Shown: in pieces, positions 16,272-63,383 of the stretch
Layout of the letters: each line of letters opens with the position of its first letter
How positions within the stretch are numbered: position 1 is the first letter of the stretch
Assembly: GCA_048013815.1 (NCBI GenBank)
Contig: CM106586.1
Span: 2,852,001-2,916,000 of the forward strand
Length of the DNA: 64,000 nucleotides
Source: Setoptus koraiensis
Lineage: Eukaryota > Animalia > Arthropoda
Direction of reading: 5' to 3'
Translations under genes and position numbers: made by a program
Notes under the pieces: generated by a model
What the model was told of the DNA's origin: nothing
Database searches by the model: none
Seen by the model: only the letters and a program-made list of their open reading frames with translations

Positions 16272-16306
16272 TGCATTTCCGACACTAGGTACTTGTCGGA
16301 AATGCA
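16272..16306. repeat. 13-bp hairpin with 9-nt loop
   Basis: TGCATTTCCGACA-ctaggtact-TGTCGGAAATGCA. Confidence 0.85.
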
Positions 16307-19300: not shown

Positions 19301-19420
19301 CACACGACTCACAGTGACACGGGAGCGCAGGTTAAAGGTGCTGCTCCCGCTTGGCCGGCAGCGGATGTGACGGTGCCCGTGGCGCATTCACGTGCGAAAG
19401 TACGAGCTGCCGGCAGAGCT

Positions 19421-19492
19421 GCCAGAGCCGACGGAGCGGCCAGAGCCGACGGAGCAGCCAGAGCCGACGGAGCGGCCAGAGCTGGCGGAGCG
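19421..19492 (+). repeat. 18-bp minisatellite x4
   Basis: GCCAGAGCCGACGGAGCG, four near-identical units. Confidence 0.9.
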
Positions 19493-20957: not shown

Positions 20958-21035
20958 GCAGTGCATCAACCAGGTGAGTTGCAGCAGTGCGCCAACAAGG
21001 TGAGTTGCAACAGTGCATCAGCCGGGTGATCACGC
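20958..21035 (+). repeat. 26-bp tandem repeat x3; two units carry AG|GTGAGT
   Basis: GCAGTGCATCAACCAGGTGAGTTGCA / GCAGTGCGCCAACAAGGTGAGTTGCA / degenerate third unit. Confidence 0.8.
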
Positions 21036-21714
21036 GAACGGCGTTATCAGTGTTGCCATTTACAAGTTGCCAGTGGACAGCGGCGGCCCGGCGAGCAGCC
21101 ACTGTGCCCAATTGCGGCAAAATGGAGAAGCTTGCCGGCCCGGCTTGGCCCGGCCCACAGCTCAGGCAACAAGTGCCGACGAGTCCATGATCGCATTACG
21201 CACAGGCACACGACACACGGCCGATAATTAGTGAGCCTGTCGCGGCGACAACAAGTGTCAGATCAGCGACAGCAATTGTTAGATTAGTGACTGGCAGCGA
21301 CAGCAGCTAGTTATGTAACCGGCTGTGCAGACAGGAAGCGCAACAGCAAACAAAGTCGAGCGCACGGTGCAGGAATTTAATGGCCAGTGGTCAAACACAA
21401 TAAAGTGGCTCGCTGGTCCAATAAAAGCAACGAGCCACTTTATTGTGATTCGGCCAAGGTAAACAGCGCAACGACAAGTTGTCTCGTTGGTCACGAGCCA
21501 GCGATCCGGCGAGCCACCGACCAACTGTTGACTGTCGGGCGGCCGCCGTGTCCGGCACGGGCCGCCGCGGCGCCTGCGCTCACCGGTCAGCTTGCGCACG
21601 AAACTGCTGGCGCAACACCGCTGGCCCAATACCGTTGGCGCAATAGTGCACCGTTTGTGCGCAGGTCAGCTCGGCTCCGCGGACCGGGCGCACCGAGCGG
21701 CCCGAGTGTGGCTC

Positions 21715-21778
21715 GCGCTCCCGACTTGAGGCGCTCCCGACTTGAGGCGCTCCCGACGTGCGGCGCTGCGGACTTGCG
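21715..21778 (+). repeat. 16-bp minisatellite x4
   Basis: GCGCTCCCGACTTGAG x2 plus two degenerate units. Confidence 0.85.
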
Positions 21779-22187
21779 GCGCGCAACACTTGTCGGCGGT
21801 CGCGCACCGCGTCGCAATCTGGCGCCCGATCTGGTGGCGCACGATCGACGGGCTGCGGCCGTCGTGTCTGCGCTAGGCAGAGGCACGCGCCACCAGGCAC
21901 GCTGGCCGCCGCGCATCACAAGCTGCGATTCGCAACTGCGTTCGGTGGCCGTGCCAACCGTCGCAATGCGACCGTCGCATTGGGCGGCTGTCGTCGGCCC
22001 GACCAACAGGTCGGCGGTGCACCGAGGCGCCGGTGCACGGCCCATTGGAGCTCGTTGCGTCACTGTCGGCGAGCGGGGCAGCAGCAGCGACAACAATGCG
22101 GCCGCTTGTTTGCAAAGCGACACGGGCCAACAGCAGCGCTGGCTTTCAGGTGGCCGCCAGCGTTTGTTGTGACGCAAGCCGCTGCCT

Positions 22188-22243
22188 ATGGTGCGCCGCA
22201 AATGGTGCGCTGCGAACGGTGCGCTGCAAATGGTGCGCTGCAA
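22188..22243 (+). repeat. 14-bp minisatellite x4
   Basis: ATGGTGCGCTGCAA units. Confidence 0.85.
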
Positions 22244-24261
22244 ATTGGCGCAAGTGAACATGAGCACGGTCACTGGCGGCACCGTCGGTAGCGCGATCCA
22301 TTATGCGCCGGCCGCCACTCTGTCGGCGCACGGCTGGCATCAGTGGTGCAGTGGTGCAGCGGTGCGTTGGACATGCCGACGCAATCGTGCAATGGTCGGA
22401 CGGCCGCGGCGGCTGCCGGATTTGCGCTGTTTGTGCTGTGCCAAATTGAATTTGCGACCATTCGGCGATCCATTGATTGGCCGCTGCAAAGTGGCCATAA
22501 TCGCGCGCCAGTGTCCGCTGGCCGCGCCAGCGCGATATGGAGCGCCAGAGCGGCTGACGCATATCCTGCCGCGGCGACTTGCTCCATATATGCGGACACA
22601 CAACATGTAAAATGGATACAAGTAGCCACGGCAGGTACGGCCTGCACTGCGCATATATCACACGGCGACGGTAGTCACAACAAGGACGCATCGTGCGCAA
22701 CAGTTGTTGCGTGGTTGCGCCGGCCAGCGCGCTAGATTGATCGATCAAAATCGATCGGCCAGCGCCGAGTGACAGGCGCATGTTGCACCGGCGCCGTCGC
22801 CATTGTTGCACGAATGGCCCAAATGGCACTGGCCGGCACGAATTTCTTAATACGGATATCGGCACCGGGGCTACCGTTGACCAGCGCGCGTCTTGTGTGC
22901 ACTATGGGCAGCCAAAGTTATGGGCGGCCAAAGTTATGGGCGATTGTCGCGGGCTAACAGAGCGGCCGACGGATGCCTAAGGACGCCAATCGACGCCGAT
23001 GGACGCAACATCGGACGTCGATGGCGCTAATACCCGGCTGCAGCAACAGGCCACAGCCACAGGCTGCAGCAACAGGCTACAGCGACAGGCTACAACAACA
23101 GGCCCTAAGCGCCTATTAAGGCCAAAGGGCGCCCGGGCTTAGGGGCCGCCGGCCTTAATGGGCCGACTAAAAACGCTGACCTGGATGGGGCCGCAAGCTG
23201 GAGTGTGGCCCCATCGAGAGCGGCTACGCTTGTCGACGGAGCATCACTCGACAGTGTCGAGTCGACACAGTGGAGAGTTGGCGACATTAAATTGCACAAT
23301 GGGCACTCGCATGCGTCCAATGCAACGCGCAACAACGACACTGCAGAGGAAGTGGGGTGAATGGCGCCACCAGCGACAGCTAAGTTGCAGCGCAAACAAG
23401 CTTTGGTTCAGGTTACGCGGCGTTGCGTTGCGCAAATGGCGCTAATGATGCCCATCACTTGTCGGTTGCATGCAAATCAGTGGCGAGCAAGGGCGACACA
23501 ATCGCGCTGCCAACAGTAACTTGTTGCCAGCGCGCAGTCATTGTTGCTTCGTTTGCTGCTGGCTTCCATTTGCTACTGTTTTACACACAGTGTGTAATGT
23601 GTGTGTGTGTTGTCGCCAGGTAAGTAAGCCGATGCGCGTACGTGCAGTGCGTACGTGCAGGACGCGCAGGACGCACAGGAAAGCGAACTAGTTGTTGCAT
23701 CGCGTTGTGTTGCGCTGCCGCGTTGCGCTCCGGCGTTGTGTCGCTTTGTTGTGGCCCCAGCAGCCGGGCAGGCTGCAGCCTAATTCGCTGCCGCTGGCAC
23801 GCGGATCAGGTCAATTGCACCAGTTGCAGCGCACCAACCGGTGACAGTTTGCAGCGCGGCCAACAGAAGGAGCACGTACGCTCAGGTTGGCTCAGGTTCG
23901 CGGCCCAGGTAGCAGCGGGCCAGATTAAGAAGCGGATGATGATAAGAGAATAATGGCGGCCAGGGCAATAGTTTGTTGAACCATGGGCAGGCAAATCTTG
24001 GCTCGTGCTAAACTTGTCTCCAGCTTGCAGTGCCGGCACGGTTGCCAACTGCAAGCTGCATTGTTGCCAACTGCGGCAGCGACAGCGGCCAACAACAACA
24101 ACAGCGACAGCAACAACAACAAACGCACCCCAAGAAATATAATAGCCGCAGCAAGTGATACTGCAGCAGCAGCGGCAGCAGCGCTGGTTCAGAGGCGGCC
24201 AACTGCACGACAACGAGGCCAGATCGAACATCTGCCGCAACACAATCTTGGCCCTCGGCTC

Positions 24262-24338
24262 GTGCACTAAGAATGGTGCACTAAGAATGGTGCACTAAGA
24301 ATGGTGCATGCAAGATGGTGCATGCAAAGATGGTGCAC
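24262..24338 (+). repeat. 14-bp minisatellite (3 near-exact plus degenerate units)
   Basis: GTGCACTAAGAATG x3 followed by GTGCATGCAAGATG-like units. Confidence 0.85.
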
Positions 24339-25418
24339 ACGAGTGCTGGCTGCGCCGGTGCTGGCCGCGACAGGGGCAGCACCAGCAGCAGCGCGAGCGA
24401 TGCACCATAAGAGAGCAAGTGATGGAAAGAGAGCGCTTACAAGTTCGCAATGTGCCAGCGGCGGCGCTAACGAGACGACGCCAGATGAACATCTGCCGTT
24501 TTTTAGTCGCGTTGCCACTAGCAACAACAGCCGCTCTTTTTGTCAGCGCAGGCTTGTGGCAGCGGCGCGCACGCACACGATATTGTTGCGCCCATTGTTG
24601 TTGCTGCTGGCCGACGCTATCCCGTGCGGCCCGACCGACAGCAACCGGTGCCGCCGGTCACCGGCCATCTGATTCAATCTGATCCAATCGATTCAAGCGC
24701 TTGTATTTGTGTCAGCGGCGGTAGCAGCTTATTTGAACAGGCGCACCAGTCGCACCGGGCACCGGCTCGTGCAGGGCACTTCCACTGGTGCGGCCGCGGC
24801 CGCCGCTGCTTGTCGCGCGGCCAGCAGTGGCATCGACGTTGCACTAGCGCAGTGACAGTATAGGCCGGCACTACCACACTGGCACTGGCACTGTGGCGCT
24901 GGCATTATGCTCGGCAGCGGCGACAAAATATGTCCCTGTGTTCGCCCATTGTGTTCGTCCGCCAATAATTGGGCCGACACGGGGGTCGCGCAACTGCCAG
25001 GCAGGCAGGCAGGCAGCGGCCAGTTGCGCAGTTCGATGAATGAGGGGAGGCGCCCGCCGAACAAAAAATGCCTTGCGCGACAGATGAGCGTTGCACGCGA
25101 ATGCGTCTGGTAGCGCGCGTGCTGCAGCCCGGCAGCATCGGGCAGCTTGCAGGGGGCGAAATTGCGAATGGGTCGCTGAATGCGGCATGTGGCCTGTGTT
25201 GTGCCAGCGCTGCATGTGCATGTGGAGCACGAGGCACCGTGATCACTTTCGAGTGTTGCCGTTCGTGTGCCTTCCCCCGGCTCGCGAGCGCTGGCGTTGC
25301 AGCAGCGCATGATGCCGCGGCAGCCCATTAGTGGTCGTTGGGCAGCTTTTTTCGTTCATTCGACGTTTGCCACTCACAGCGCGCGCACGCATTTCGAGAC
25401 GACGATAACAGCGCAACA

Positions 25419-25522
25419 TTCGACACAGCGAAATAGTTCGACACAGCGAAATAGTTCGACACAGCGAAATAGTTCGACACAGCGAAATAGTTCGACAGCG
25501 AAATAGTTCGATGCAACGATAG
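25419..25522 (+). repeat. 18-bp minisatellite about 220 nt upstream of the sDscam ATG
   Basis: TTCGACACAGCGAAATAG x4 exact plus two shortened units. Confidence 0.92.
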
Positions 25523-25739
25523 TTCGATCGGCGGAACAGTGCAGCAAGCAGCAAGACGAGCGAGCATCTAATGAGTGACAAATCCGCATCGTGTTTTACC
25601 AGCGCCCGCAACAGGCCCCACACACACCAGAATCAAGCATCCGAAGCCCACGAAGCTCACGACGAAACGCCGAAAATATCCACCCAAAACAAGATATAAT
25701 CCGCCGCAAGTTAGTTAGTGCGTGTTACACTGCAGCAAC

Positions 25740-28700
25740 ATGGCCCCAAGCAACTCTCACAGCCAGCTCTGCTCAATTGGGCTCCCGTTGGCCCTGCTGG
25801 CCGCCCTACTAGTGGCCGCCCGCAACCCGAGCGTGTCCGCCAGCAACTACATGCAAACCACCGACCACAATCAACAATCATTCAGATATATCAACAATGT
25901 TAACAACAGACAAGCAGCCAGCAAGCCCCAGTCACAACAGCAACAACAACAACAAATATCCCTGTCCTCGCATAATTCGCAACAGCAGCAGCAGCAACAA
26001 GCACCCATTATAGAGCATTTTTCATTTAATTCAAATGTGCAAGAAAATCAACGCCAATCATTACAATGTACAGTGTCCAGCGGTGATCTGCCCATCAAGC
26101 TTGTCTGGTACAAAGATGGCCTGTTGCTTACAAGAGAACTGGCACAGGCGAACGGCATTAAAATTAATCTTGTCGCAGACTATTTATCTACCATTTTGTT
26201 CCAAAGTATGAAATTAGAACATTCGGGCAACTACACATGCACGGCCCAAAACAAAGTGGGCACTGTGGCCCATTCAACGCAGCTTGTGGTGCACGGCGAG
26301 CCAAGATGGCTCAAGGAACCGCAACGCGATAGCATAACGCTCAGAGGACAAACAGTTGTTGTCGATTGTCAGACAATCGGCTATCCGAAGCCAACGCAAA
26401 CGTGGCTCTCTTCAAAATGTAAGTATTCAACCAACTTAATGATTCTGGTGCCAGCATCACGCAAGCCAACTACAGATATCATCTCGACAGCCAAACCATA
26501 GCGCCATATCCGATTCTATTGCTAATCTTTTCTTCAAATCTCGACGTCAACGACACTTCTGTGCAAACAACACAGTAGCTCACACAGAATATGAGCCCAT
26601 TGTTGCTAATGATCGTATTCACATTGCCACTAATGGATCTTTGATAATCAAACATGCCGATAAGAATGACGAGGCCAATTATCTGTGCAAATCAGTTAAT
26701 GGTATTGGTCAAGGATTGAGCGCTACCACAAAACTGCGAGTTAATGGTAAGTTTCTCCATCACAACATGCAATGCAATAAGCATAATTATCTATAATCTG
26801 ACTGACGAGCGGACAAGTTGTAAAAAGAGACTCTCATAATTAATCTTGTTGTTACAATATTGACTTGTTTCCACCACACGCACGTTCATACTTCACTATT
26901 CATTCATTAGTTCCAGCACATTTCAAATCTAAGTCGTCATCCATTGTGGTCCGAAAGCAAACAGATATTCAGCTGCGCTGCGATGTCATTGGTGATCAAC
27001 CAATCACAATTGAATGGTTCAAAAACAAACAAAAGTTACAACTTGACAGCGAACAAAGATATTCCGTCCATGAAACACAAACACCCAGTGGCCTGATATC
27101 TCTTTTGATCATTCGACAAGCTCAACGACAAGACAATTCAGTGTATGAATGTCACACACAAAATTTGGTTGGACGAGATGAACTTCTCATTGATTTGGCC
27201 GTGCAAGAGGAGCCTGATAGTATACAAGAGATACAAGCCACACAAATAGGCTCTAGGTCAATAACAATCGCTTGGACGTTACCTTACGACGGCAAGAGTC
27301 CCATACAAAGTTACTTGTTCCAGTACAAAGAGATCGCCGAACCAACTACAAATGATCCTACTGTTCTCGACTCTTATGTTGTTCACCAACCAGCTGTTGA
27401 TGATTGGATGAATGCTCAACGCGTTGTTGTGAGTTCAAATCAATCAAATTCATGCACAATCGACAAACTAGATCCATCAACTAAATATCTCATTAGAGCA
27501 TTGGCCATTAACGCCATCGGACAAAGCAAATTCAGTCATCCTATGGAGTTTCAAACTGATGAAGAAGCACCCGAATCTGGACCAACGTTCATACAAGCAA
27601 CTGCCTTGAATTCTACAAGTATCCTAGTTTCATGGCAAGAGGTGCCTAAAAGCAAACAGTTGGGTCGCATAAGCGGCTACTACATAGGTCACAAGGTTGC
27701 TAACACCTCACAAGCGTTCTTGTGGAACTCATTCATCATCAATGAGCTCCTGGTGAGTCAACAGCAGCATGAATCCATTAGTAATGGACACCAACAAATG
27801 GTTAATCAACAGAAGCTAGGCAGACGTCTGGATACTGTCATTAGTGATCTTAAGCGCGATACGACATATGAAATAACTGTTGTGGCTTTCAATTCACAAG
27901 GTAGCGGACCTTCTTCAGAATATGTGACATGTAAAACCAACGAAATGGATCCCCCAAAACCAGTCAAGATACAGATAAAACGATACACAAATGAGACAAT
28001 ATTTGTTGAGTGGCAACGCGATCCTACCGACCAAAATCCAGTCGATGACTATGTCTTGTTTCAAGAAAAAAATTCCGCCTCACAAGAGTGGCTACAAATT
28101 CGACTCCCTGGAAATCAAACTCAATATAAGGTAAGTTTCTCTAAACAATTCACCGCATATATCATGCCTGACAAATATTCCCAACGAACCCTTCCACTAA
28201 TACTCTGATTGCTTCTACGTTTGAATTTGTGATTACAGGCTCCAGGACTGAAGTGTGGCACAAGATATCAATTCTATATCATTGCATACAACAAGGTTGG
28301 AAAAAGCGCTCAAAGTGATGTAGTCAGCGCATCCACTAGTGGTGCCTTACCAATTGTACCTTCTAAGATGGCTTTAATCAAGATGGTCAACTCTACCTGC
28401 CTCAGTATCAATTTGAATTCCTTCCAAGATAGCGGTTGCAGAATCCGAAATGTGGCTCTCAGATACAAAATAGAAAAGACATCTACATTAGATGGCATGA
28501 ATTCAAACCAACAGCAAGCACAATCAAAAAGTATACCTTCGTCTTCTCAATCATCAGACTGGATAACAATCAGACAAAAAAGTAAACCATTCCAAAATCA
28601 GGAGGATCGAATTGAATATCTATGCAATTTGAGCCCAACTGGAGAATATACAATTCATGCCTCTGCTGGAAATGATGTCGGTCGATCCGAAATTGAACAT

Positions 28701-32935: not shown

Positions 32936-35900
32936 CTACTTAAAGCCGAAGGCAGCCGCTATGCCACCCGCCTCCTCTTGCCAGGCTGTCAGATCTAGAT
33001 CGGGCACCTGAGAGCAGGGTACGCGCGGATTATAGATTGGGTGGGGCAGTCGGAGCACTTGAGGTTGAATTGTTGTCAAAAAGTCCGAATTATAACAGAA
33101 CAGACGCGCCTGTGTGGCCTTGCGAATTTCGGCCAATTGTGCAACAGTGAACGAGGCTGGCGTGTTGGAATTCTCAAACCAGAAGCGGTCGCCACGCCGG
33201 ATATTGGAGAACTGACGTGCAATGATGCAGGCAAATGTGGGCCCCACTTGCGAACCTGGCAAGCGTCGTTCTGAGATACCGCCGGACCAGAGATCAATGT
33301 CGTCCACGTGCTTATAGAGACGCGAATAATAATAGGCAGTTCTGTTGTTGAGATAGGGCTCCAAATCATCAAATGTTTTTGCCCTAGGCAAACCGCACCA
33401 CTCGCGGTAATAGTTGTAGCCGGGCGTTCCTTGTTCTCGGCCGCGCGCCAAATTAATAGCGGGCAAATCCATGCCAACGTGCTCGCCGGGCTCCTGAAAC
33501 AAGTGGCCCGCTATCTCTTCTGTTATGAAAGGATCGTAGGTTTGCGCGGGCGTGTTCAGCACACCAGTCAGTATTTCGTCCATTCTACCTGGCTGATAAT
33601 AATGGAATGGTCGCTTGAACATGGTTCGCAATTGTTCCGATCCCAAGAATTCGTGATTCCTGTTGTAGCGTCTCACCTTGCCTTGAATAAACGTGTGACC
33701 CTGTCTGAATGCGGCCGTTGTGAAGCCTTGCGATATAGACGGCGTCACGTTGGGATCGTAACCGTCCCAATATCCTTGCGACTCTGTCAAATTATACAAT
33801 CGCATCATGTCGTGGCCCACAAGCAATGGTAGATATTCATTGAGCAGTATGTGCTGCACAGTGGCGGCCTGGATATGACGCGTCTCATGGTACAACTTGT
33901 CGTCGTCCCAATGGGGATTTATTTGAGCCAAATCACGGGCCATCCTATTGTGATCCCTGACATACAAGGTGTGCATCATTGTTAGTGTTGGTTGTTCGTT
34001 GACGCGCTCATCGCCACCGAAAAAACAATAAGTGTTAGCGGGCCGACCAAAACAATCTAAATCGGGCTTATCCAACTGTTGTGGCATCAGTGGTTTAAGA
34101 TTCAAATGATCAAAAACATTTTGCACCTTCAGCTGGCCACCCTGAAACAATCGCAACTTGTCGGCAATGTCCTTCGTCGATCCGTAGATGGTGTTGGCGT
34201 CTATTGTGGCCGTGATTGTGTTGATGTGCACTCTCGGACCTATCGCGTTTCGTTTTGTATCATACGGGGATGAAGAGAGTTCAGAGTTAAAAGTTAGTTT
34301 TCGCAAGTTCAATTGTTGTTGAAATCGCCCGCTTAGTTTTGCGTATATTTCCCGGAAGTTTAGCGCCCTCATAAGCGCTGGCAAGAACAACTAACTAATT
34401 GGGGTAATTAATACATTGTTCCGGCAGCAACAGTTCTAAGCCATGGTCTGGACCACCCAAAGTCCCAGCCGACTTCGTCCAACGGTCGAAATGGTCGGAA
34501 GTGGTTTAACCATTGAGTTTCTACCGGCACGCTAGACACATCTGACTAGATGATGTGAAAAAATGGACAGATGCCCATAATTCAACAGGACTTGCTAAGG
34601 AGCTGGACTATTGTGCAATACAAGTGCGCGTTCGTTAACATCGTCTGACCGGACAATAATAACGTTCTCGATAAATTACCTTCGCCACGCTAATATCTCG
34701 ATGTTAATTACATTAATGAATCAAATTGACTGAGTCTCGACTGGCACACAACCTCGACTTAGCTTACCTAGAGCACAATTGGGTCTAATGCCTGCTAGTG
34801 ATCGCTTGAAATCCATACATTTCATATTGTAACGACTGTACAGGGGATCGTTGTCCGGTATCTCGATTGGTTTGCAATTGGGATGTTGACGCTTACAACA
34901 ATTGAAGTCCATGCCGTGCTCATCTTAATTGTTACATCAGGGAGAATTATAGTGATAGAGCGAGAACGTAATTGTGAGATTGATCGTTACGCAAAAATGA
35001 AATTGTTGATTCATTTGTTGTATCGGACACACATAAATCAGCTTGCATGACAGGTTATGTAAATAAGCAAATGCGAACTGACAGACCGTTAATTGCAAAA
35101 CGGGATACTCTAACACATCGTAGAGCTGCATGCCCAATCATACTTGATGTTGACGCAAAGCCACTTCATTTCACTTCAATTTGAATTTTTTCAACATTTT
35201 TCAAAATTGTGACGATCGCACACAACCGACAAACTGTGTGCCGAGTGAGCCTTCGACAAGTGTCTGTCAGCCTGTTGATGGGCTGGCCAGACAGTCGGTA
35301 GGACACGCACAACTGAATGTAACCATCAGGCCACAGGTGAAACTGGCTGCTTGTCAAACTTGTGGTCCGACAGAGACGCTGAAAGCAATTTGCTAGCCAG
35401 TGCCGTTGTTTGCTTACCTCTTGGAGGTGCCGCCAATGCGACATCGTGATCAATTATCTGACCCCAGCTCATGATTAGCAGCGACAAATCGCTCGAAGGT
35501 TGATCGTGATCCCTATGAACAATAGAGGTTACCAGACGGGGCGAGGGAAGCGGCGCTCCGCCAACCACGGACACCCGTTCCGCTTGTATGCCGTCCGGAT
35601 GCATGGGAGGCAGATAGCGCACGAAGGGAGTTTGTGCCGCGCCCCAGGCAGGATATTTCAAATTGTTGCAATGGCCCGTGAAGGATCTGTAGCGCGTTAG
35701 TTTGCATTCTATTGGTTTCACCATGAGCGGACATATTGGCCAGAACATGGTTTTTGACATGTCTATCAGTGGTAGGCCATTGAGTATTTCGTCGTTGGAC
35801 AAATCAAATCTATTGGCCAATATGCGCGTCACCTCCTGATTGAGTTCGCCTATTGCCGCTATGCTGACCACGGCCGGCTCAATGCTGTTGACGGCCTCAC

Positions 35901-36909
35901 TGTGAGCATAGTCGTCGAATTGCAGCCTGTATTTAGCCTCTTGAATGGCCTTGTTGACGTCGTTGTAGGTGATGCAGAGTCGTTCGCGCTTCTTATTGTT
36001 TGAGTTTGTCACCTTGTTCAAATTGAATGCAGAGCGCGCACTCTGACCGATGGCCAGAATATTGTCGAATAAGTTGGCGAATGTTGCGCCCCCGTTGGAG
36101 GTGGTAGCCGACGTGTCGATATTGTTAGTTGGATCGTCATTGTCGGTGATGTTAATTAAATCGTCGGCCACCTTCTTCACATAGGTTCGTTGCAAAATGA
36201 GAGCGCATTTAGTTGACTGTTGCTGTCTGCTGCCTGTTGCCGTTAATTGTTGCGCAATATTGGCCAGTTTAAGCGGAACACTGTTACCGTTGTTGCCCGT
36301 CAGAGCCAACGCCTGTGGCTGAACTTGACCGTTGACCGCTTGCAAGTTGCCGCTGTGGTAGTCGCTGTTTACCTGTCGCCCGTATCGCAGCTGCTGCTGC
36401 TGCTGTTGCTGCTGGCCCACTGCTTTGCTGTTTACGTGGGCCGCGGGACTCTTCAGCGTCTTAACTGCACTTCCGGCCGCGCCGCCTTTCACCTGTCCGG
36501 CCATGAAGCTCTTGTAGGCCGGCTTGCTTTGCATGTCGGCGTCTGCCGACGCGAATACGGCCGACAGAAGGGGATTCTTTTTGGCTGGCGTTGCGTAAAT
36601 CAAATTGTGACTCGAGGGTGACTGAAGGTGGCTGTCGAATAGTTGCTGTTGGTCGTTGTGAACAGTGGTGGTTGAGCTCATCATCAGCGGTTGTGGGTAG
36701 TGTTGATTGTAATTGGGCTCGTTTAAATTATGGTAGATCACATGATGTTGTTGGCTGATGGTGGTCGGCGGCGCTGCTGCTGCTGTCTCACTGTTTAAGC
36801 TGCCATCAGCGACACTGAATGCCAGCACCACCTTTTGACTATGGTGTGTAGTTAACAGTAACAAAGTGACCATTACAGTGACAAAGTTAGTGCAAAAGTA
36901 TGTCCACAT
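32936..36909 (-). CDS. Secreted animal heme peroxidase (chorion peroxidase/curly-Su-like); complement join(35418-36909,34768-34923,32936-34239), about 983 aa (alternative upstream ATG at 37053)
   Basis: RYRSFTGHCNNLKYPAWGAAQTPFVRYLPP, distal WGQIIDHD, DANTIYGS, GDERVNEQP, proximal AAFRQGH, DLPAINLARGRE, VGPTFACIIARQFSNIRRGDRFWFEN; two phase-1 GT-AG introns; hydrophobic N-terminus (VTVMVTLLLLT). Confidence 0.93.
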
Positions 36910-38813
36910 TGTGTAGAGATTGTAGTGAGCAATTGTGACGCTATTGTTGTTGCTGTTGTTGTTGCTGTTTTGTTGCACCGTTGTCTTGTGCTTCCTCTTT
37001 CTCTTGTACATGAGATCGGTGGCCGGATCGGTTTGTTTGTCCGGGAGCCTCATCTTGAGTTTGTTGCGCACACAATTGATTAATCGATCGATTAATTATC
37101 TAATTATCCGACTGCTGGAGTGTGTTACTAGAAGTGTGTTGATTGGGGTGCGTTAATTGGGGTGCGTTAATTGGAGTGTGTGTGTGTGTGTGTGTGTAAG
37201 TGCGGGGCCAGGGCAAAACTGGGTCAGTTGGGGTTCATCACCGTCAGCGAATTCGCATTCTCAGTGGACGCGCTTTCTACATGGTCCGCGACTCTCTACA
37301 CGGTCACTCGGCACGATATACATGACGATATACATGCCAGCCGAAATCGCAAGCGGATAGTGCCAGCCCGGCGGCGACCTTGTTGCTCGCTGGCCACTGC
37401 GTCTACACTTTTCACGGCCGACGGTCGACGGTGCGACAATCGTGCAATTTTGCAAAATTTAATTGAAATTGCAAGAATGCAAGAATGCAAAATTGCAAAA
37501 TTGCAAAATTTCATTCAAAATTTGCATGCAATTTCAATCATTAAACTATCCGGCGAATTAGCATGCTGGCCATCGGAGCTGCTGTTGCAACAACTGTATC
37601 AACTTACCTTTGTAGTTTGTAGTTGCAGCGCTCACCAATTGTGCTGCCAGTTGCTGCTGGCGATATTTCAGTATTAGTGTATCAGTTATTGTGGCGCTAG
37701 TGGCAGTTGCTGAAATTCACTTAATTAAACTTCCTCTCGCTAATCTGATACCAAATTACAAGTGGCTGAATGCTTACATTTTGTTGGCCGCGGCGTTGTT
37801 TCGTTGTTGGTGCCATTTGTCACTTGACAACTGCAACTGGCGCCTTACTAACAGCGATTTGTAACAATAATAATAGTCTGATAATTGTCGCCTTCTTGCT
37901 GCCGACTCACTAACGTTGTTGTTGTTGTTGTTGTGTGCATTCAAGATGCAGACTGGTCGGCCAATACTTGATACAAGGACAAGGTTGCGCGGCGCCCGAT
38001 ATTGTCGGCTCACACGAGATGTGCGAGCAAACGGTGACACTTGTTGCACTAATTAATTAGCGTAAAACACTGCCGATGGATGAGCGCTGGACAGTGGAGA
38101 CAGGTAACTACTAATTAGTGACTAATAAACGAATAACTAAGTCAATAACTGTTAGCGACCAACTGATGGATGGATCTGTTGTGAGTCGTTGGCTGCTGCT
38201 ACTGCTCTAATTGTAATGCCGTTATCGCTGTCAATTTGCGCTGTCAAATAGTTATTATTATTGATTGCTGTTGGTTGTTTACTTTTTTGCAGCCGCAACT
38301 TGTAGCGCTGTAGCGTGTATGTAATGTTATGATCTGGACATCACGTTGCGCGATGTTTCAATGACACGTCGATAGGTCGTTTCCTCTATGAGTATAGACA
38401 AATGACTTTTGTCAATACAACGAGACTTGTAAAACAACAACAACGACAACACCAACTGTTGCAATTTGTGAATAAACAAACATCTATCGGCTGGCCAAGA
38501 TAACACAGCCAGAGAATAAAGAAGGCAAAAGCAAAGTTTTTTTTTTCACATGATTTATCGATTGTCGAGCTCGTGCTCTAATGAGCGCCATTCATTCGAT
38601 AGATTATTATTCTGGGTGGTTCCCTACCAGGCCGTTGCAATCTCTGCGTTCCCCATAACGGCTGGTAATAATGATAATTTCGCCAGATAGACGCGACACA
38701 GACCGCCTCCCCCTCCTCGTCTGAGCGACACATTGCTGGCTTGGCTGACATGACACAGCCAGACGCTGGCTAGCCAGCCAGACAGCCAGCCAGCGTGCAT
38801 GTATATATATCCT

Positions 38814-57452: not shown

Positions 57453-60400
57453 ATGAAGTTCTTTGTGCCTTCAAACAAGAGGTAAGTGTAGTTCTACGGG
57501 CTGGATAAGTGCAACGCGAATTCCTTAGAAGTCCATTAATATAGTGATAATAAGTAACAAGTGACAATAGTCAACATAATAATAATGATTGCGACTTCAA
57601 AATTGTTCCATCATCTCTAGCTTCATCTTGCTCTTGGCTATTGTCGGCACTCTTCTAGTTACTGGACTTTCGCCAGTCCTATCTAAAGAGTCAGACGTAA
57701 GTAAACCTATAGATACTATTAGATGATTACTATTAAATGAGCAAAACAAACAGAGAGCGATCACTCTGATCTGTCAGTAATTCGAAATCTCTCTGATTCG
57801 TATGATCCTCACAATGTTGCAACAATCAATACATGTATCGTATAGAAATCTGTCCAGACGGTCGAAGTTGAATCAGACGAGGTATACGACTCAGAATCGG
57901 CTGAAGAAACCTATGAAAACAACAACAAAGAAACAACTTACAGCGAGTCCACCGGAAGTGAATCATATCCCCCGCCTCCACCACCGCCGGCCTACTTCAA
58001 TGGACCTTACGGACCACCAGCCTATGAGGCCGGTGTTTACCCACAACCAGAGGCACCGCCTGGTTATTATGAAAGTCCCAAATATCCAGTAGCGGCAAAT
58101 TACTCATCCAGCTACGGGCCAGCTTATCCACCACCAAGTTACCCGGCACCTAGCTACCCAGCACCTGTGTACCCAGCTCCAAGTTACCCTGCTCCGAGCT
58201 ACCCAGCTGCAAGTTACTACGAAGCGCCCAAGTATCAAGCACTAGACAACTACTCGGTCAGCTACTCAGAGACAACTAAATACTCTGCTCCAAGCTATGT
58301 AGCGATAACCAGTTACTCAGCGCCAACAGCGAGCTATCCGGAGACACCTAGCTACACGGCACCAGCAACAAGCTACCCAGCACCAACAGCAAGCTACTCT
58401 GCACCAGCAACAAGCTACTCGGCACCAGCAACAAGCTACACAGCATCAAGCCCTAGCTACTCGGCACCGACGGCGAGCTACCCAGAGGCACCAAGCTACA
58501 CGGCACCAGCAACAAGCTATCCAGCACCAACAGCAAGCTACCCAGCACCAACAACAAGCTACTCTGCACCAGCCAGTTATTCTGCACCAGCAGCAAGCTA
58601 CTCTGCACCAGCTTCCTACTCCGCACCATCATACTCAGCCCCATCAAGCTACTCGGCACCAAGCTACTCTGCACCAGCCAACTACTCCAGCAGCTACTCT
58701 GCCCCAGCCAGCTACTCTGCACCAGCAACAAGCTACACAGCATCAACAACTAGCTACACATCCCCAATAACAAGCTACCCAGCACCGACAACAAGCTACC
58801 CATCAACACCCAGCTACCCAGAGCCAGCCCCGAGCAGCTACTCGGCACCCGCTACAAGCTACTCGGCACCCGCTACAAGCTACTCGGCACCCACCACAAG
58901 CTACTCGGCACCCGCTACAAGCTACTCGGCACCCGCTACAAGCTACTCGGCACCAGCAACAAGCTACTCGGCACCCACTACAAGCTACTCGGCACCCACT
59001 ACGAGCTACTCAAGCTCAAGCTATTCAGCACCAACACCAAGCTACTCGGCCCCTGCTGCAAGCTATCCAGAGGCCCCGAAATACTCTGCACCAGTTCCGA
59101 GCTACAATTCAGCGCCCAGAGAATATAGCCCAGCGCCGGCCTCGGCACCCAGCTACTCGGCTCCGGCTGCAACCTCGTCGGCAAGCTATTCATCGTCATC
59201 GACTAGCTATGCGGCGCCAGCGACCACTTATACCGCGCCAGCGGCCACCTATACCGCGCCAGCGACCACCTATACCGCGCCAGCGACTAGCTATACCGCG
59301 CCAGCGGCCAGCTACTCGGCCGCGCCAGCCAAGAGTTACCCGAGCGCCGCTTACAAGAGTCCGGCGCCGACATACCGATCGTCCTATCCGGTGGTGACAC
59401 TGCAATATCCGCAGCACTTGGTCAGCGCCAGCTACCCGGCCAAGCAGGCCGCCAGCAATTACACCCGCTACATGCCCGTCTACGATTCCAACGATTCGCC
59501 TTGGGGCGACGACGCCCTGCCGCCCTACTGGTGGGTGTATCAGGTGCCCGTGGGCGGCTACACCGGCGACATAAACTATCGTCTGCCGCTGAACAGAAAC
59601 TATCGTCACAACTACAACACGGCCCATCCGATGTTGAGCTATTACGCAACGGCTCCCTATCGGGTGTGTCCGCGCGAAGCTTACAAGCGTCCGCCGAGCG
59701 ACCAAGATTACCGTGCAGCGTTCACGTACGCCGTGGACAAATTGCGCCAACAAAACTATGCCTCGGTGTCCTATTTGAACCAGAGCACGCCCAGCTACGC
59801 GGCCCGGCATCAGATTTTCAGCTCGTGGGCAACAGGTAACAGTCGCGCCGACGAACAGGGTCTGCTGGTGGAGTACGCAAGCCATTATTTGGCACAGAGG
59901 ATCTGTTTGACCAAATGGGACAAGCAGCGTTATTTGCCAACGCTGACACTGGGCGCCACAAACGGCGTTTACCCGGCCGGCCATTCGTGCCAGCAGTACG
60001 GGCAACAGAAGCGCTCCGCCGAGGGCTGGAACCTAATGGAAGCGACCAAGTCGCGCTACCGCACCGTGGACGGCTTCGGCAACAACCCGTACCACCCGTA
60101 CTGGGGCAAGGCCAACGTGTGCCACATCCGGTTGCTGACGCCCGACTATGCGGACGGCATTTCGGAGCCGCGCGCCTCGTACTTGCCGCACGCGCCGCTG
60201 CCCAACGCGCGCGCCGTCTCCAACTACATCCATAAGGACGTGCACTTACAGGGCCCCTATAACATGCTCAAGATGCAATGGGGCCAGTTCATAAATCACG
60301 ACATCACTAACACTCAGTTGAGCTCGTACGAGGGCCTCGTGGACTGTTGTAAGACGCCCAACGTGCGCGGCTGCTACCCAATTTACGTGCAACCGGGCGA

Positions 60401-61760
60401 CAAGCACTACCAAAAGTACAATGTTACCTGTTTGAACTTTGTCCGGTCGGGCGTGTGCCCGTTGTGCCAGTTCGGCCCGCGCCAACAGATCAACAAGAAC
60501 ACCGCCTATTTGGACGCAAGTCAGGTGTACGGTAATGATGCGGAAACCGCGCGCCAATTGCGCCTGTTCAAGGACGGTCAATTGCGCTACAGCGTCAACA
60601 GCCGCGGCGAAATGCTACTGCCCCTGGTGGGCGCCACCAAGGACGGCCAATGCCAGGGCAACTGTTACGTGGCGGGCGATTCGCGCGTCAATCAACATCC
60701 GGCGCTCACCGCATTGCACGTGTTGCTGTTGCGCAGACATAATCAGCACGCGCGCGGCCTCGCTCAGGTGCACAGAAACTGGAACGACGAAACGCTGTAT
60801 CAAGAGGCCCGAAGGATCGTGGTGGCCGAATACCAAATGATCACATACAACGAGTATCTGCCCATTGTGTTCGGGCCCATCCTGTCCGAATATTACCATT
60901 TGACGCCCGGCAAGGGCTACCAGCACAACGACTACACCCACTACAACAAAGACGTGGATCCCACCACGTGGAACGAGTACATAACGGCGGCGTGTCGCTT
61001 TGGGCACTCGCAAATTCAGAATTTGTTCGGATTGTATCCGCGCATACTGAGCCTGTACGACCAAAAGCAACCGAATAGGGCCAAATACCTCAACGCCACA
61101 ACCAGTACCTTCCGCCTGAAGGATTGGTTCATGAACCCGTCCCAGTTGAGCGAGGGACTGACGCAACAGATCGTCAACGGTCTTGTGTCGCGACCGTCGG
61201 CCGCGGTCGACCCGTGGGTAGCGAACGACGTCAGAAACTATTTGTACAAGTCGCGCCACGAGCGAACCGGCGGCGATTTGGCCGCCACAAACATTCAGCG
61301 CGGTCGCGATCACGGTCTGCCCTCATACACCCACTACCTGGAATATTGCTTCAATCACAAGGTGAAATCGTGGCAAGACCTCAGTCTATACATACCAAAC
61401 GATGTGCTGGATCAGCTGAAACGATTGTATGTTGTGCCGGAAAACGTTGATTTGTTCACGGGCGGCATGAGCGAGCGTCATTTCCCCGAGGCGGACATTG
61501 GGCCCACCTTTGCCTGCATCAACGGCATCCAATATTATCATTTGAAATTTGGAGATCGTTACTACTTTGAGCACAGGGGCCAAGCGGGCTCCTTCACCCC
61601 GGAACAACTGTACGAAATCAAAAAGTCCACCCTGGCCCGTCTGCTGTGCCGAACAGCGTATCTGCCCTCGTCGCCGCCGTACGCCTTCTTTTATCCATCG
61701 CAACACAATCAATTGGTGGATTGTGCCCGATACGGCGAGATCGACTACAGAGCGTTCTAG
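57453..61760 (+). CDS. Secreted heme peroxidase with a large N-terminal Tyr/Pro/Ala/Ser repeat domain; join(57453-57481,57621-57696,57846-61760), about 1339 aa
   Basis: Two small GT-AG exons give the signal peptide MKFFVPSNKSFILLLAIVGTLLVTGLSPVLS; about 500 aa of SYxAP repeats follow; then RYRTVDGFGNN, WGQFINHD, LDASQVYG, GDSRVNQHP, AACRFGH, DLAATNIQRGRDHG, IGPTFACI, FGDRYYFE. Confidence 0.93.
58836..59003 (+). repeat. Coding 21-bp minisatellite (SYSAP[A/T]T x8)
   Basis: AGCTACTCGGCACCCGCTACA units in frame, within a longer degenerate repeat region (about 58100-59350). Confidence 0.92.
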
Positions 61761-62489: not shown

Positions 62490-63383
62490 TCATACGTCGG
62501 TGTGGAGATCGGGGTTGAAGTCTTCGGTAGGGGCGGATATCGTTGAGCTGGAGCTGAATCCATTTCCGGCCTTTGTGGGCATCATCGCTGATTTAAGCTG
62601 ACTGGCGTTCTTTGTGGCGATTGTGCCACTGGACACAACGGAGCTGGTTGTTGTATCGGGATAATTGTTGTTGTTTGTCATCAGTTGATTGTCTCGCGTA
62701 TGATCGTGATTAATGACCGTTGTAGGCTGTTGTGGATTGTCGTTGAAACGAACCGCTTGTGGCCTGTGTGCCGATGATATAACTCGAACCTTCTTGGGAT
62801 ATTGCAATGTATGAAATTGTTGCTGATTCTGCTTGTTCGGGCTACTGCTCATAGTATCACCGGCTCGCGTTTTTGCGTAATCGAGCATCACAGCCGGATA
62901 GTCGGCGTGCTGATGCAAATAGTTATTGTCGTAGGAACTGAGCTTTATTGATTGACTGTATTTCGGCTCATTTGGCGGCCTCGCTAACACGTACTGCTGA
63001 TTTTGGTGAGCTTGATTGGCGCGTCTCGCCGACGGTGCGCCCAAAGTGTTGTATTTGTGGCCACGATTGCCAAAACCGTTGCTAGACGCGGGCTGTTTGG
63101 CCAACAGCAATCCCGACGACGATTGGCCAGTCGGCTGGTTTGTGTCGCCAACATAATCCAGGATGTAAGCGTTGGCGTTTGCAATTATTGTCGACGGCGA
63201 GCTCATGTGATCAAAGTCGATTGCGTTGCTGGTGCCGTTCGTTCGAGCTGCCTCCATCAAGGTGGGATACATCAATTGCTGGCTGCTGGTGTCCGGCGAA
63301 GAAATCGAGTCGGCGTTGGGCGAGGCCGAATCCGAGGTTTTGCCGGTGTCGCCGCTATCCGTTGCGTCGCTCACATACTGGCC
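62490..63383 (-). CDS. Probable terminal exon of an unidentified gene (low-complexity S/N/Q-rich tail ending HTDV*)
   Basis: Stop-free for about 297 codons; candidate acceptors ACACAG| (63384) or GGCCAG| (63378) with an in-frame stop just upstream; upstream exons not seen in the window. Confidence 0.6.
   Translation of the reverse strand, partial: GQYVSDATDSGDTGKTSDSASPNADSISSPDTSSQQLMYPTLMEAARTNGTSNAIDFDHMSSPSTIIANANAYILDYVGDTNQPTGQSSSGLLLAKQPASSNGFGNRGHKYNTLGAPSARRANQAHQNQQYVLARPPNEPKYSQSIKLSSYDNNYLHQHADYPAVMLDYAKTRAGDTMSSSPNKQNQQQFHTLQYPKKVRVISSAHRPQAVRFNDNPQQPTTVINHDHTRDNQLMTNNNNYPDTTTSSVVSSGTIATKNASQLKSAMMPTKAGNGFSSSSTISAPTEDFNPDLHTDV

What the first reader, a model, noticed from the sequence alone, without database searches (positions are those of the whole stretch)
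57453..61760. Peroxidase carrying its own tyrosine-rich structural substrate (candidate self-cross-linking cuticle or eggshell protein)
Seen: signal peptide, then about 500 aa of YPAP/SYSAP(A/T)T repeats with Tyr roughly every 5-7 residues, a Tyr-rich Cys-containing linker, a dibasic site QQKR|SAE at about 60003-60020, then a complete animal heme peroxidase domain. Established: arthropod chorion and cuticle peroxidases harden matrices by dityrosine cross-linking, and YxAP/APA-type repeats are typical of cuticular and vitelline-membrane proteins. Inference: a single gene encodes both enzyme and substrate, either self-polymerising or split by a proprotein convertase into a matrix protein plus its cross-linker.
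Basis: partly seen in the sequence, partly recalled or inferred. Interest (0 to 1): 0.75.

Follow-up and report, generated by a model that had tools for sequence, protein, structure and literature searches.

The report
Mite peroxidase with resilin-like tyrosine tail
A gall-mite gene really does fuse a secreted haem peroxidase to a 466-residue tyrosine-rich, resilin-like repeat tail, and the same genome has a separate secreted protein built from that repeat, so the enzyme probably cross-links itself into the matrix it hardens.

Summary
A three-exon gene (57453-61760, +) encodes these parts:
- a signal peptide and an acidic stretch;
- 466 aa of SYSAP/SYPAP repeats (16% Tyr, spaced 5-7 residues apart);
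- a Tyr-rich linker that ends in a folded helical pro-domain;
- a complete animal haem peroxidase domain.

The genome is a 48.8-Mb, two-chromosome eriophyoid mite. By size it matches Setoptus koraiensis.

The fusion is not an artefact. About 20 related species carry a Tyr/Pro-rich tail and the peroxidase in one open frame. In one relative, 3.4-kb transcript-like contigs from seven runs span the whole protein.

The Tyr-rich tail marks an acariform-mite orthogroup. That group has also lost both haem-ester residues (Asp to Asn, Glu to Gln). This predicts an enzyme that oxidises phenols or tyrosine rather than halides.

A single-copy gene elsewhere in the genome encodes a secreted protein made of about 700 aa of the same SYSAP repeat. 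SYSAP is a natural variant of resilin's SYGAP motif.

My reading is a matrix-hardening peroxidase whose tail tethers it as a co-substrate. The function is inferred. The proposed KR cleavage site is at chance level and is not conserved. I class this as a new variant of a known kind, of moderate to high interest.

The parts
57453..57481 (+). Exon 1: start codon and the positively charged n-region of the signal peptide (MKFFVPSNK plus 2 nt), followed by donor gtaagt at 57482.
   Evidence: Read directly from the sequence. Orthologues P0007 and P0010 start with comparable signal peptides.
57621..57696 (+). Exon 2: hydrophobic core and c-region of the signal peptide. It is flanked by acceptor ag (57619-57620) and donor gtaagt (57697).
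   Evidence: Translation of 57622-57696 gives FILLLAIVGTLLVTGLSPVLSKESD. A similar upstream signal-like mini-exon is seen in relative L038.
57846..61760 (+). Exon 3: a single 1304-codon open frame plus stop. It carries the acidic stretch, the repeats, the linker/pro-domain and the peroxidase.
   Evidence: no stop codon. Its GC content is 0.55-0.58, against about 0.38 in the flanks.
57846..57974 (+). Acidic Glu/Ser-rich stretch (aa 1-43 of exon 3).
   Evidence: Composition. A comparable acidic stretch follows the signal peptide in orthologues.
57975..59372 (+). Tyr-rich repeat tail of 466 aa: SYSAP(A/T)T, SYPAP and TYTAPA units, 74 Tyr, no Cys, three NYS sequons.
   Evidence: In the 90%-identical relative the tail is 72% identical with about 30% gap columns.
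59373..59624 (+). Disordered, Tyr-rich, non-repetitive segment (aa 510-593).
   Evidence: AlphaFold2 pLDDT is about 30 over model residues 1-84.
59625..60056 (+). Folded helical pro-domain (aa 594-737) with three Cys, conserved across the chelicerate relatives.
   Evidence: Model helices H110-128, 142-151, 156-176, 181-194 and 205-226, with pLDDT 77-94. Conserved columns in alignment A1.
60009..60014 (+). The Lys-Arg pair in QQKR|SAE, the proposed cleavage site.
   Evidence: Position. It lies in the lowest-confidence stretch of the pro-domain (pLDDT 57). It is present only in the query and P0001.
60057..61661 (+). Animal haem peroxidase domain (aa 738-1272).
   Evidence: Pfam E 1.3e-174. Lactoperoxidase E 2.4e-76. 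Model pLDDT mostly above 90, and Foldseek matches MPO/LPO with target-normalised TM 0.83-0.86.
60285..60302 (+). Distal motif G-Q-F-I-N-H-D. Gln, His and the Ca-binding Asp are kept, but the ester-forming Asp (LPO Asp108) is Asn (codon 60294-60296).
   Evidence: Superfamily signature -G-Q-x-x-D-H-D- from PMC4420034.
60684..60695 (+). Motif R-V-N-Q. The catalytic Arg is kept, but the ester-forming Glu (LPO Glu258) is Gln (codon 60693-60695).
   Evidence: Signature -R-x-x-E- from PMC4420034.
61005..61007 (+). Proximal His (LPO His351). Its Asn/Arg partners lie at 61290 and 61299.

Best explanation
This is a real single gene of an eriophyoid mite. It encodes a secreted haem peroxidase that carries its own cross-linkable, resilin-like tail.

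Proposed mechanism:
1. The signal peptide sends the protein into the secretory pathway.
2. The 466-aa disordered tail (Tyr every 5-7 residues, S-Y-x-A-P grammar) mixes with a Tyr-rich extracellular matrix. That matrix is built at least partly from the genome's standalone SYSAP-repeat protein.
3. H2O2 is supplied, plausibly by the genome's Duox. The peroxidase then oxidises tyrosines to radicals that couple into di- and tri-tyrosine.
4. This hardens or elasticises the matrix and covalently fixes the enzyme in it through its own tail.

The loss of both haem-ester residues predicts a low-potential enzyme suited to one-electron oxidation of phenols and tyrosine rather than halide oxidation.

Shown here: the gene architecture, its conservation, the catalytic-residue pattern, the shared repeat and the presence of Duox.

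Inferred: secretion, peroxidase activity, dityrosine formation, the partnership with the standalone protein, and which matrix is involved (eggshell, cuticle, spermatophore or glue).
For: Architecture:
- Continuous 1304-codon exon preceded by two signal-peptide mini-exons.
- Full-length PF03098 match and an MPO/LPO fold.

Conservation:
- 21 unnamed proteins are 60-90% identical over the linker plus peroxidase. All those with a complete N-terminus carry long Y/P-rich tails.
- On the tree, the tail-bearing proteins form one acariform clade (support 97-100). Their tails are 90-600 aa, with Tyr mostly 5-19%. Other chelicerate peroxidases have tails mostly 20-50 aa long with 0-4% Tyr.
- The Y-x-x-P grammar is enriched in many tails, for example 24 against 7.1 +/- 2.4 in P0017.

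One mRNA:
- P0010 lies complete on 3.4-kb contigs in seven SRA runs. These have 70-116-nt leaders and an AATAAA close to the 3' end.

Substrate-like tail:
- The single-copy gene at C2:18.14 Mb encodes a signal peptide, about 700 aa of SYSAPA/ANYSSSYSAP repeats and a C-terminal domain. It is 70-97% identical at protein level to tail segments.
- SYSAP is a natural variant of resilin's SYGAP motif (PMC12082076). Resilin is cross-linked through dityrosine (PMC7794388).
- Peroxidase-driven dityrosine hardening of eggshells is established (PMC13409908).

Catalysis:
- Distal Gln/His/Arg, the proximal His-Asn-Arg triad and the Ca-binding Asp are kept.
- Fewer haem ester bonds go with a lower redox potential and poorer halide oxidation (PMC5787809).

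H2O2 source:
- A Duox gene is present at C2:23.95 Mb, with a second match of equal score in the opposite orientation at 23.96 Mb that I did not examine.
Against: - There are no expression, localisation or biochemical data for this species.
- With both haem-ester residues gone, activity is assumed rather than shown.
- The tail is also rich in Ser, Thr and Pro, so it could be mainly a glycosylated spacer.
- The repeats of the two genes are only about 77% identical at DNA level. A shared peptide repeat plus shared codon preference could produce that without any functional coupling.
- The only other species pair I could examine is anecdotal: P0008 with P0211 from the same SRA samples, both with Q/P/Y-rich low-complexity parts.
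- Some members of the orthogroup (Panonychus, P0119) have tails poor in Tyr.
Confidence: 0.55

Rival explanations
1. Precursor model. A proprotein convertase cuts at QQKR|SAE and releases a free Tyr-rich matrix protein and a separate mature peroxidase.
For: - The KR pair lies 11 residues upstream of the KSRYR start of the catalytic core, in the least confident stretch of the modelled pro-domain (pLDDT 57).
- This is about where the mature lactoperoxidase chain begins in the alignment.
- The standalone SYSAP protein has a true furin-type R-Y-K-R|N between its repeats and its C-terminal domain.
Against: - QQKR has no P4 Arg, and there is no R-x-[KR]-R anywhere in the protein.
- There are five dibasic pairs in all, about the number expected by chance.
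- The site exists only in this species and its 90%-identical relative. The other orthologues have a second Cys there instead.
- A cut at this site would leave the folded helical pro-domain attached to the tail.
Confidence: 0.12
2. The tail is a glycosylated, mucin-like or condensate-forming domain for localisation or solubility. It positions or concentrates the enzyme but is not itself a cross-linking substrate.
For: - The tail is 54% Ser, Thr and Pro, has no Cys and carries NYS sequons.
- The stretch directly after it (aa 510-593) is predicted disordered. The repeat tail itself was not modelled, so its disorder is inferred from composition.
- Tail sequence turns over fast while composition is kept.
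Against: - Tyr enrichment (16%, regular spacing, Y-x-x-P grammar) is the conserved feature across tails whose other residues differ. A plain spacer does not need that.
- A tethered Tyr-rich chain next to an active peroxidase would be oxidised anyway.
Confidence: 0.2
3. The peroxidase domain is catalytically dead or weak, and the protein is purely structural or adhesive (peroxinectin-like).
For: Both haem-linking residues are replaced, Asp to Asn and Glu to Gln.
Against: - All residues needed for compound I formation and haem ligation are invariant across the clade.
- The domain is 92% identical to that of the close relative, against 72% for the tail.
- There is no KGD or RGD motif.
- Haem peroxidases without covalent haem links are active in other superfamilies (my own knowledge).
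Confidence: 0.08
4. Gene-model artefact: the repeat is an intron, a separate gene or non-coding satellite that happens to be open in frame.
For: - Repetitive DNA is open in several frames.
- There is no RNA evidence for this species.
Against: - The frame runs unbroken for 1304 codons into the peroxidase.
- The same layout is seen in genomic contigs of other species (L031, L038) and in transcript-like contigs.
- The repeat region shares the exon's high GC content (0.58, against about 0.38 in the flanks).
Confidence: 0.03

Closest known systems
Arthropod secreted haem peroxidases of the Pxd/Pxt ('peroxidase' / 'chorion peroxidase') group, family 3 of the peroxidase-cyclooxygenase superfamily
   Same: - Single PF03098 domain behind a signal peptide and a helical pro-region.
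- 37-44% identity to chelicerate, insect and crustacean proteins carrying these automatic names.
- Chorion peroxidases harden eggshells by di- and tri-tyrosine cross-links (PMC13409908).
   Different: - The insect sequences fall outside the chelicerate clade that holds the query.
- They keep the ester-forming Asp and Glu and have N-terminal regions with 0-2% Tyr.
- None of those examined carries a structural-protein-like repeat tail.
Peroxidasin
   Same: The concept of a haem peroxidase fused to matrix-type modules, so that the cross-linker sits inside the matrix (PMC3533774 listed; my own knowledge for the 'enzyme-matrix protein' idea).
   Different: - No LRR, Ig or vWC domains.
- Peroxidasin keeps both ester bonds and works through hypobromous acid and sulfilimine bonds (abstract of PMC5377774, listed). 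This enzyme has lost both ester residues, and its appended module is a disordered Tyr-rich repeat.
Pro-resilin
   Same: - A repetitive, disordered, Tyr-bearing elastomer precursor with an S-Y-G-A-P core, of which SYSAP is a natural variant.
- It is cross-linked through dityrosine.
- The Y-x-x-P grammar is shared.
   Different: - The tail is Gly-poor (about 2%) and rich in Ala, Ser and Thr.
- No R&R chitin-binding domain is found in the tail or in the standalone protein.
- Here the repeat is attached to the enzyme.
Dictyostelium peroxidase A (DdPoxA, PDB 6ERC)
   Same: A member of the superfamily with reduced haem-protein linkage. It has one ester bond, a lower redox potential and poor bromide and chloride oxidation. 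It matches by sequence and by structure.
   Different: DdPoxA keeps the Glu link, whereas the mite clade has lost both Asp and Glu. DdPoxA has no repeat tail.

Membership tests
Animal haem peroxidase (PF03098; peroxidase-cyclooxygenase superfamily) | Full-length match to the domain profile | tested here: met
   E 1.3e-174, 582 bits, profile positions 1-520 of 530.
Animal haem peroxidase (PF03098; peroxidase-cyclooxygenase superfamily) | MPO/LPO-type alpha-helical fold | tested here: met
   AlphaFold2 mean pLDDT 83 and pTM 0.85. Foldseek matches MPO/LPO with E about 1e-38 and target-normalised TM 0.83-0.86.
Animal haem peroxidase (PF03098; peroxidase-cyclooxygenase superfamily) | Distal Gln-His-Arg, proximal His-Asn-Arg, Ca-binding Asp | tested here: met
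   Q814, H818, D819, R947, H1054, N1149 and R1152 of the exon-3 protein. The pattern is conserved across the clade.
Animal haem peroxidase (PF03098; peroxidase-cyclooxygenase superfamily) | Ester-forming Asp and Glu (signatures G-Q-x-x-D-H-D and R-x-x-E; PMC4420034) | tested here: not met
   Asn817 and Gln950 stand in their place. Position 258 is not Glu in any of the 46 tail-bearing acariform sequences (Gln in 45, Met in one), and position 108 is N, Q, I or V.
Insect chorion peroxidase (Pxt/Pxd) orthologue | Groups with the insect sequences on a tree | tested here: not met
   The query lies in an acariform-only clade nested among chelicerate sequences. The five hemipteran, thysanopteran and orthopteran sequences form a separate clade (quick tree, SH-aLRT only). 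No Drosophila or Aedes reference sequences were in the set.
Insect chorion peroxidase (Pxt/Pxd) orthologue | Located in the eggshell and makes dityrosine | not testable with these tools
   No expression or proteomic data for this species.
Peroxidasin | LRR, Ig-C2 and vWC domains flanking the peroxidase | tested here: not met
   Pfam finds only PF03098 in the whole exon-3 protein and nothing in aa 1-735.
Peroxinectin | Integrin-binding KGD (or RGD) motif | tested here: not met
   No KGD, RGD or LDV in the protein.
Pro-resilin | Tandem S-Y-G-A-P-type repeats with regularly spaced Tyr | tested here: met
   SYSAP x24 and Y[ST]AP x32. Pro at Tyr+3 for 52 of 91 Tyr, against 15.9 +/- 3.4 expected. 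The SYSAP variant is documented in PMC12082076.
Pro-resilin | Gly-rich repeats and an R&R chitin-binding domain | tested here: not met
   Gly is about 2% of the tail. There is no Pfam domain in the tail or in the standalone protein.
Insect vitelline membrane proteins | Conserved VM domain (a Pfam family) | tested here: not met
   No Pfam hit at E <= 0.1 for the tail plus linker or for the standalone SYSAP protein. The resemblance of their YSAPA-type repeats is my recollection only.

The most novel reading that the evidence does not exclude
The peroxidase tail and the matrix protein it acts on evolve as a matched pair. In this lineage both carry SYSAP arrays. In another eriophyoid the peroxidase (P0008) and the homologue of the matrix protein (P0211), found in the same samples, are both Q/P/Y-rich. 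On this reading the enzyme is recruited by like-with-like repeat association and then welds itself and its partner together. That would be a natural one-component-plus-catalyst, self-curing resilin-like material, run by a haem peroxidase that has given up covalent haem linkage to specialise in tyrosine.
Probability: 0.3. Interest if true: 0.8.

Novelty: new variant of a known kind. Interest (0 to 1): 0.6.

Why it matters
Dityrosine cross-linking by haem peroxidases hardens eggshells, cuticles and resilin. Normally the enzyme and the Tyr-rich substrates are separate gene products.

Here a whole mite orthogroup has the substrate-like module built into the enzyme. In eriophyoids it has grown to hundreds of residues, and a standalone protein uses the same repeat. 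This gives a directly testable model of how a cross-linker is targeted to its matrix and immobilised there. It may also show how an animal with about 6,000 genes builds its flexible cuticle or egg coat.

The clade is also a natural experiment in removing both haem ester bonds from an MPO/LPO-type peroxidase.

For biomaterials work, it is a ready-made design for a self-cross-linking resilin-like polypeptide.

Tried and rejected
- **Word-index search, standalone protein:** searching with its C-terminal domain (candidate lengths 0.55-1.75x) found nothing. The full HMMER scan of representatives gave a single homologue, P0211.
- **JGI metagenome scan:** a scan for that domain found no relatives. 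The co-variation test therefore rests on one extra species pair.
- **DNA gap lengths:** I tried to use them to test frame conservation in the repeat between the query and the 90%-identical relative. The result was uninformative, because alignments of repeats give arbitrary gaps. I rely instead on the unbroken frame in both species.
- **blastn between the two SYSAP arrays:** it gives 77% identity over 659 nt. I do not treat this as proof of common descent, because both genes use the same preferred codons.
- **Pfam on the tail, linker and standalone protein:** no families found.
- **Literature searches:** I looked for a peroxidase with a Tyr-rich tail and for eriophyoid peroxidases and found no prior description. 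This library is incomplete, so that is weak evidence of novelty.
- **C1:22.864 Mb hit:** this match to the repeat is a simple SYQLPVT-coding tandem repeat and is unrelated.
- the joined three-exon protein was not searched or folded.
Full report
**What is in the sequence**

On the + strand, an ATG at 57453 opens a 29-nt exon that ends at a consensus donor (AG|gtaagt). A 76-nt second exon (57621-57696) encodes FILLLAIVGTLLVTGLSPVLSKESD and is again followed by gtaagt. After a gtatag acceptor, a third exon (57846-61760) runs for 1304 codons without a stop. Exons 1 and 2 together read as a classical signal peptide: a basic n-region, a 13-residue hydrophobic core and a small-residue c-region. I did not search or fold the joined model. 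Exon 3 was used by reference.

Exon 3 has these parts:
- An acidic stretch, aa 1-43.
- A 466-aa repeat region, aa 44-509. Its composition is S 23%, A 22%, P 20%, Y 16% and T 11%, with no Cys. It holds 74 Tyr, and 62 of 73 Tyr-Tyr gaps are 5-7 residues. SYSAP occurs 24 times and SYPAP 7 times.
- A 228-aa Tyr-rich segment with three Cys.
- A complete An_peroxidase domain at aa 738-1272 (E 1.3e-174).

Tandem Repeats Finder sees the 21-nt periodicity.

**The organism**

The window lies on contig 2 of a 48.76-Mb assembly of two contigs, of 24,221,962 and 24,533,333 bp. The closest named peroxidases come from acariform mites, with Dinothrombium at 46-49% identity. The published chromosome-level genome of the eriophyoid mite Setoptus koraiensis has two chromosomes and an N50 of 24.53 Mb (PMC11920263). 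That is the size of contig 2. I take the genome to be that species or a very close one. This is an inference from size only.

**Is the fusion real?**

Three lines of evidence say it is.

First, twenty-one unnamed proteins from public assemblies are 60-90% identical over the linker plus peroxidase. Every one with a complete N-terminus has a long Tyr/Pro-rich low-complexity region in the same open frame.

Second, the 1073-aa orthologue P0010 has a signal peptide, a 384-aa tail and the peroxidase. It lies complete on 3.4-kb contigs in seven separate SRA runs. These contigs have 70-116-nt leaders and an AATAAA about 30 nt before the end of the longest one. That is what mRNA assemblies look like.

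Third, genomic contigs of two other species repeat the layout. In L031 (90% identical) the frame runs on upstream through SYSAP-type repeats to the end of the contig. In L038 the frame extends upstream through an acidic stretch, and a signal-like mini-exon lies further upstream in another frame.

Between the query and L031, identity is 92% in the peroxidase, 85% in the linker and 72% in the tail. The tail alignment has about 30% gap columns. The tail therefore turns over quickly by gain and loss of units while staying in frame and keeping its composition.

**Where it sits among peroxidases**

On a maximum-likelihood tree of 81 sequences (quick search):
- The query falls in a 24-sequence clade with support 100.
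- That clade is sister to a 20-sequence clade holding Dinothrombium, Leptotrombidium, Dermatophagoides and Panonychus (support 97).
- Oppia and Brevipalpus join next (support 99).

All 46 of these have N-terminal regions of about 90-600 aa, and in most of them Tyr is 5-19%. Neighbouring chelicerate peroxidases mostly have regions of 20-50 aa with 0-4% Tyr. The insect sequences group apart.

The tails share a grammar even though their residues differ: Pro stands three positions after Tyr far more often than in shuffles. Examples are 52 against 15.9 +/- 3.4 in the query, 24 against 7.1 in P0017 and 22 against 9.2 in P0013.

The Tyr-rich tail is therefore an old feature of one acariform orthogroup, and it is much expanded in the eriophyoid-like clade.

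**The catalytic domain**

The AlphaFold2 model of aa 510-1304 (mean pLDDT 83, pTM 0.85) has three zones. The first 84 residues are disordered. A helical pro-domain of about 140 residues follows. The core is confident and superposes on myeloperoxidase and lactoperoxidase (target-normalised TM 0.83-0.86, E about 1e-38).

Distal Gln, His and Arg are present, as are the Ca-binding Asp and the proximal His-Asn-Arg triad. The two residues that define the superfamily's covalent haem are replaced: G-Q-F-I-N-H-D stands for G-Q-x-x-D-H-D, and R-V-N-Q stands for R-x-x-E (signatures from PMC4420034).

Position 258 is Gln in 45 of the 46 tail-bearing sequences and Met in one. Position 108 is N, Q, I or V. 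Sister chelicerate groups mostly keep the Asp, with a few exceptions. Ticks, insects and crustaceans keep both.

In this superfamily, fewer ester bonds go with a lower redox potential and weaker halide oxidation (PMC5787809). I therefore infer an enzyme that works through the ordinary peroxidase cycle on phenolic donors such as tyrosine. This is a prediction, not a result.

**A standalone protein made of the same repeat**

Searching the genome with the tail found one other locus, at C2 about 18.144-18.146 Mb on the minus strand. It is an 898-aa open frame with four parts:
- a signal peptide (MANFKLNAIVLAILVASC...);
- a short Gln/Ala- and Thr-rich start;
- about 700 aa of SYSAPA and ANYSSSYSAP units (S 36%, A 26%, P 17%, Y 17%);
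- a furin-type R-Y-K-R|N followed by a non-repetitive C-terminal domain of about 140 aa.

Segments are 70-97% identical to the peroxidase tail at protein level, and about 77% identical over 659 nt at DNA level.

The gene is single-copy and has no Pfam family. Its C-terminal domain has one detectable relative among 1.84 billion representatives. This is P0211, a 209-aa secreted protein that shares LDTQPEFTQAWADFPY (E 4e-14).

P0211 comes from the same SRA samples as peroxidase P0008. The low-complexity parts of both are Q/P/V/Y-rich rather than S/A/P/Y-rich. This is a single anecdote of co-variation between tail and partner. Attempts to find more pairs failed.

**Comparison with known materials**

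- S-Y-G-A-P is the core of resilin repeats, and SYSAP is a documented natural variant (PMC12082076).
- Resilin is cross-linked by di- and tri-tyrosine (PMC7794388).
- Peroxidase-driven dityrosine formation hardens insect eggshells, with Duox supplying H2O2 in Rhodnius (PMC13409908).
- This genome has a Duox gene with peroxidase-like, EF-hand and ferric-reductase domains at C2:23.95 Mb. A second match of equal score lies in the opposite orientation at 23.96 Mb and was not examined.

The mite proteins are not resilin. They are Gly-poor and lack the R&R chitin-binding domain.

**The proposed cleavage site**

I do not find the KR site convincing, for four reasons.
- QQKR lacks the P4 Arg, and no R-x-[KR]-R occurs in the protein.
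- The five dibasic pairs in the protein are about what chance predicts.
- The site is present only in the query and its 90%-identical relative. All other orthologues have a second Cys there.
- Cutting there would leave the folded pro-domain attached to the tail.

In its favour, it lies in the least confident stretch of the pro-domain model. It is also near the point where the mature lactoperoxidase chain starts in the alignment. I keep it as a minor rival.

**Verdict**

Its central idea is well supported at the level of gene architecture and comparative evidence: one gene encodes both the enzyme and a substrate-like Tyr-rich domain. The function remains inferred.

My best reading (0.55) is a secreted matrix-hardening peroxidase whose resilin-like tail acts as tether and co-substrate in a matrix built with the standalone SYSAP protein. 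The main rival (0.2) is that the tail is a glycosylated spacer or condensate-forming domain.

I found no earlier description in the paper library. I class it as a new variant of a known kind, and the earlier notes of this scan that I looked at did not mention it.

Noticed in passing
G000:C2:18143739-18146432, minus strand (L025:4740-7433:-): Single-copy gene for a secreted 898-aa protein. It consists of about 700 aa of SYSAPA/ANYSSSYSAP repeats, a furin-type RYKR|N site and a novel C-terminal domain (motif LDTQPEFTQAWADFPY). It has no Pfam family and one remote homologue, P0211.
   Followed up: yes
window 32936-37071, minus strand: A second haem peroxidase gene 22 kb upstream, in two large open frames. 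The N-terminal frame (35326-37071) is Gln/Asn-rich rather than Tyr-rich and holds the first 93 profile positions. The frame at 32936-34390 holds the rest (37% identity to the query).
   Followed up: partly
G000:C2:23950070-23951035 (-) and 23963396-23964361 (+); L036:1174-5598:-: A dual oxidase (Duox) gene with An_peroxidase, EF-hand and ferric-reductase domains at the first locus (Pfam-checked). The second locus gives a match of equal score in the opposite orientation, about 13 kb away, but was not examined. Together they look like an inverted duplicate.
   Followed up: partly
exon-3 protein positions 817 and 950 (window 60294-60296 and 60693-60695) and their alignment columns: The tail-bearing acariform peroxidase orthogroup lacks both haem-ester residues. 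Sister chelicerate groups mostly lack only the Glu. Ticks, insects and crustaceans keep both. This is a stepwise loss of covalent haem linkage.
   Followed up: yes
window 16000-26000: A 10-kb stretch with GC 0.57-0.64, against about 0.38-0.46 elsewhere. It has only a few long open frames, all with GTG starts. I did not examine it.
   Followed up: no
G000:C1:22864213-22864457 (L026:4974-5581): A perfect tandem repeat that reads SYQLPVT in one frame, at least 11 units long, in DNA that does not look coding. It matched the tail only through composition.
   Followed up: partly
L037, L038 and L040 (contigs of related species): Downstream of the peroxidase orthologue lie a DUF1168 gene and then a protein kinase gene, both on the opposite strand, in two species. 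I did not check whether this gene order also holds in the window (ORF 62490-63374, minus strand).
   Followed up: no
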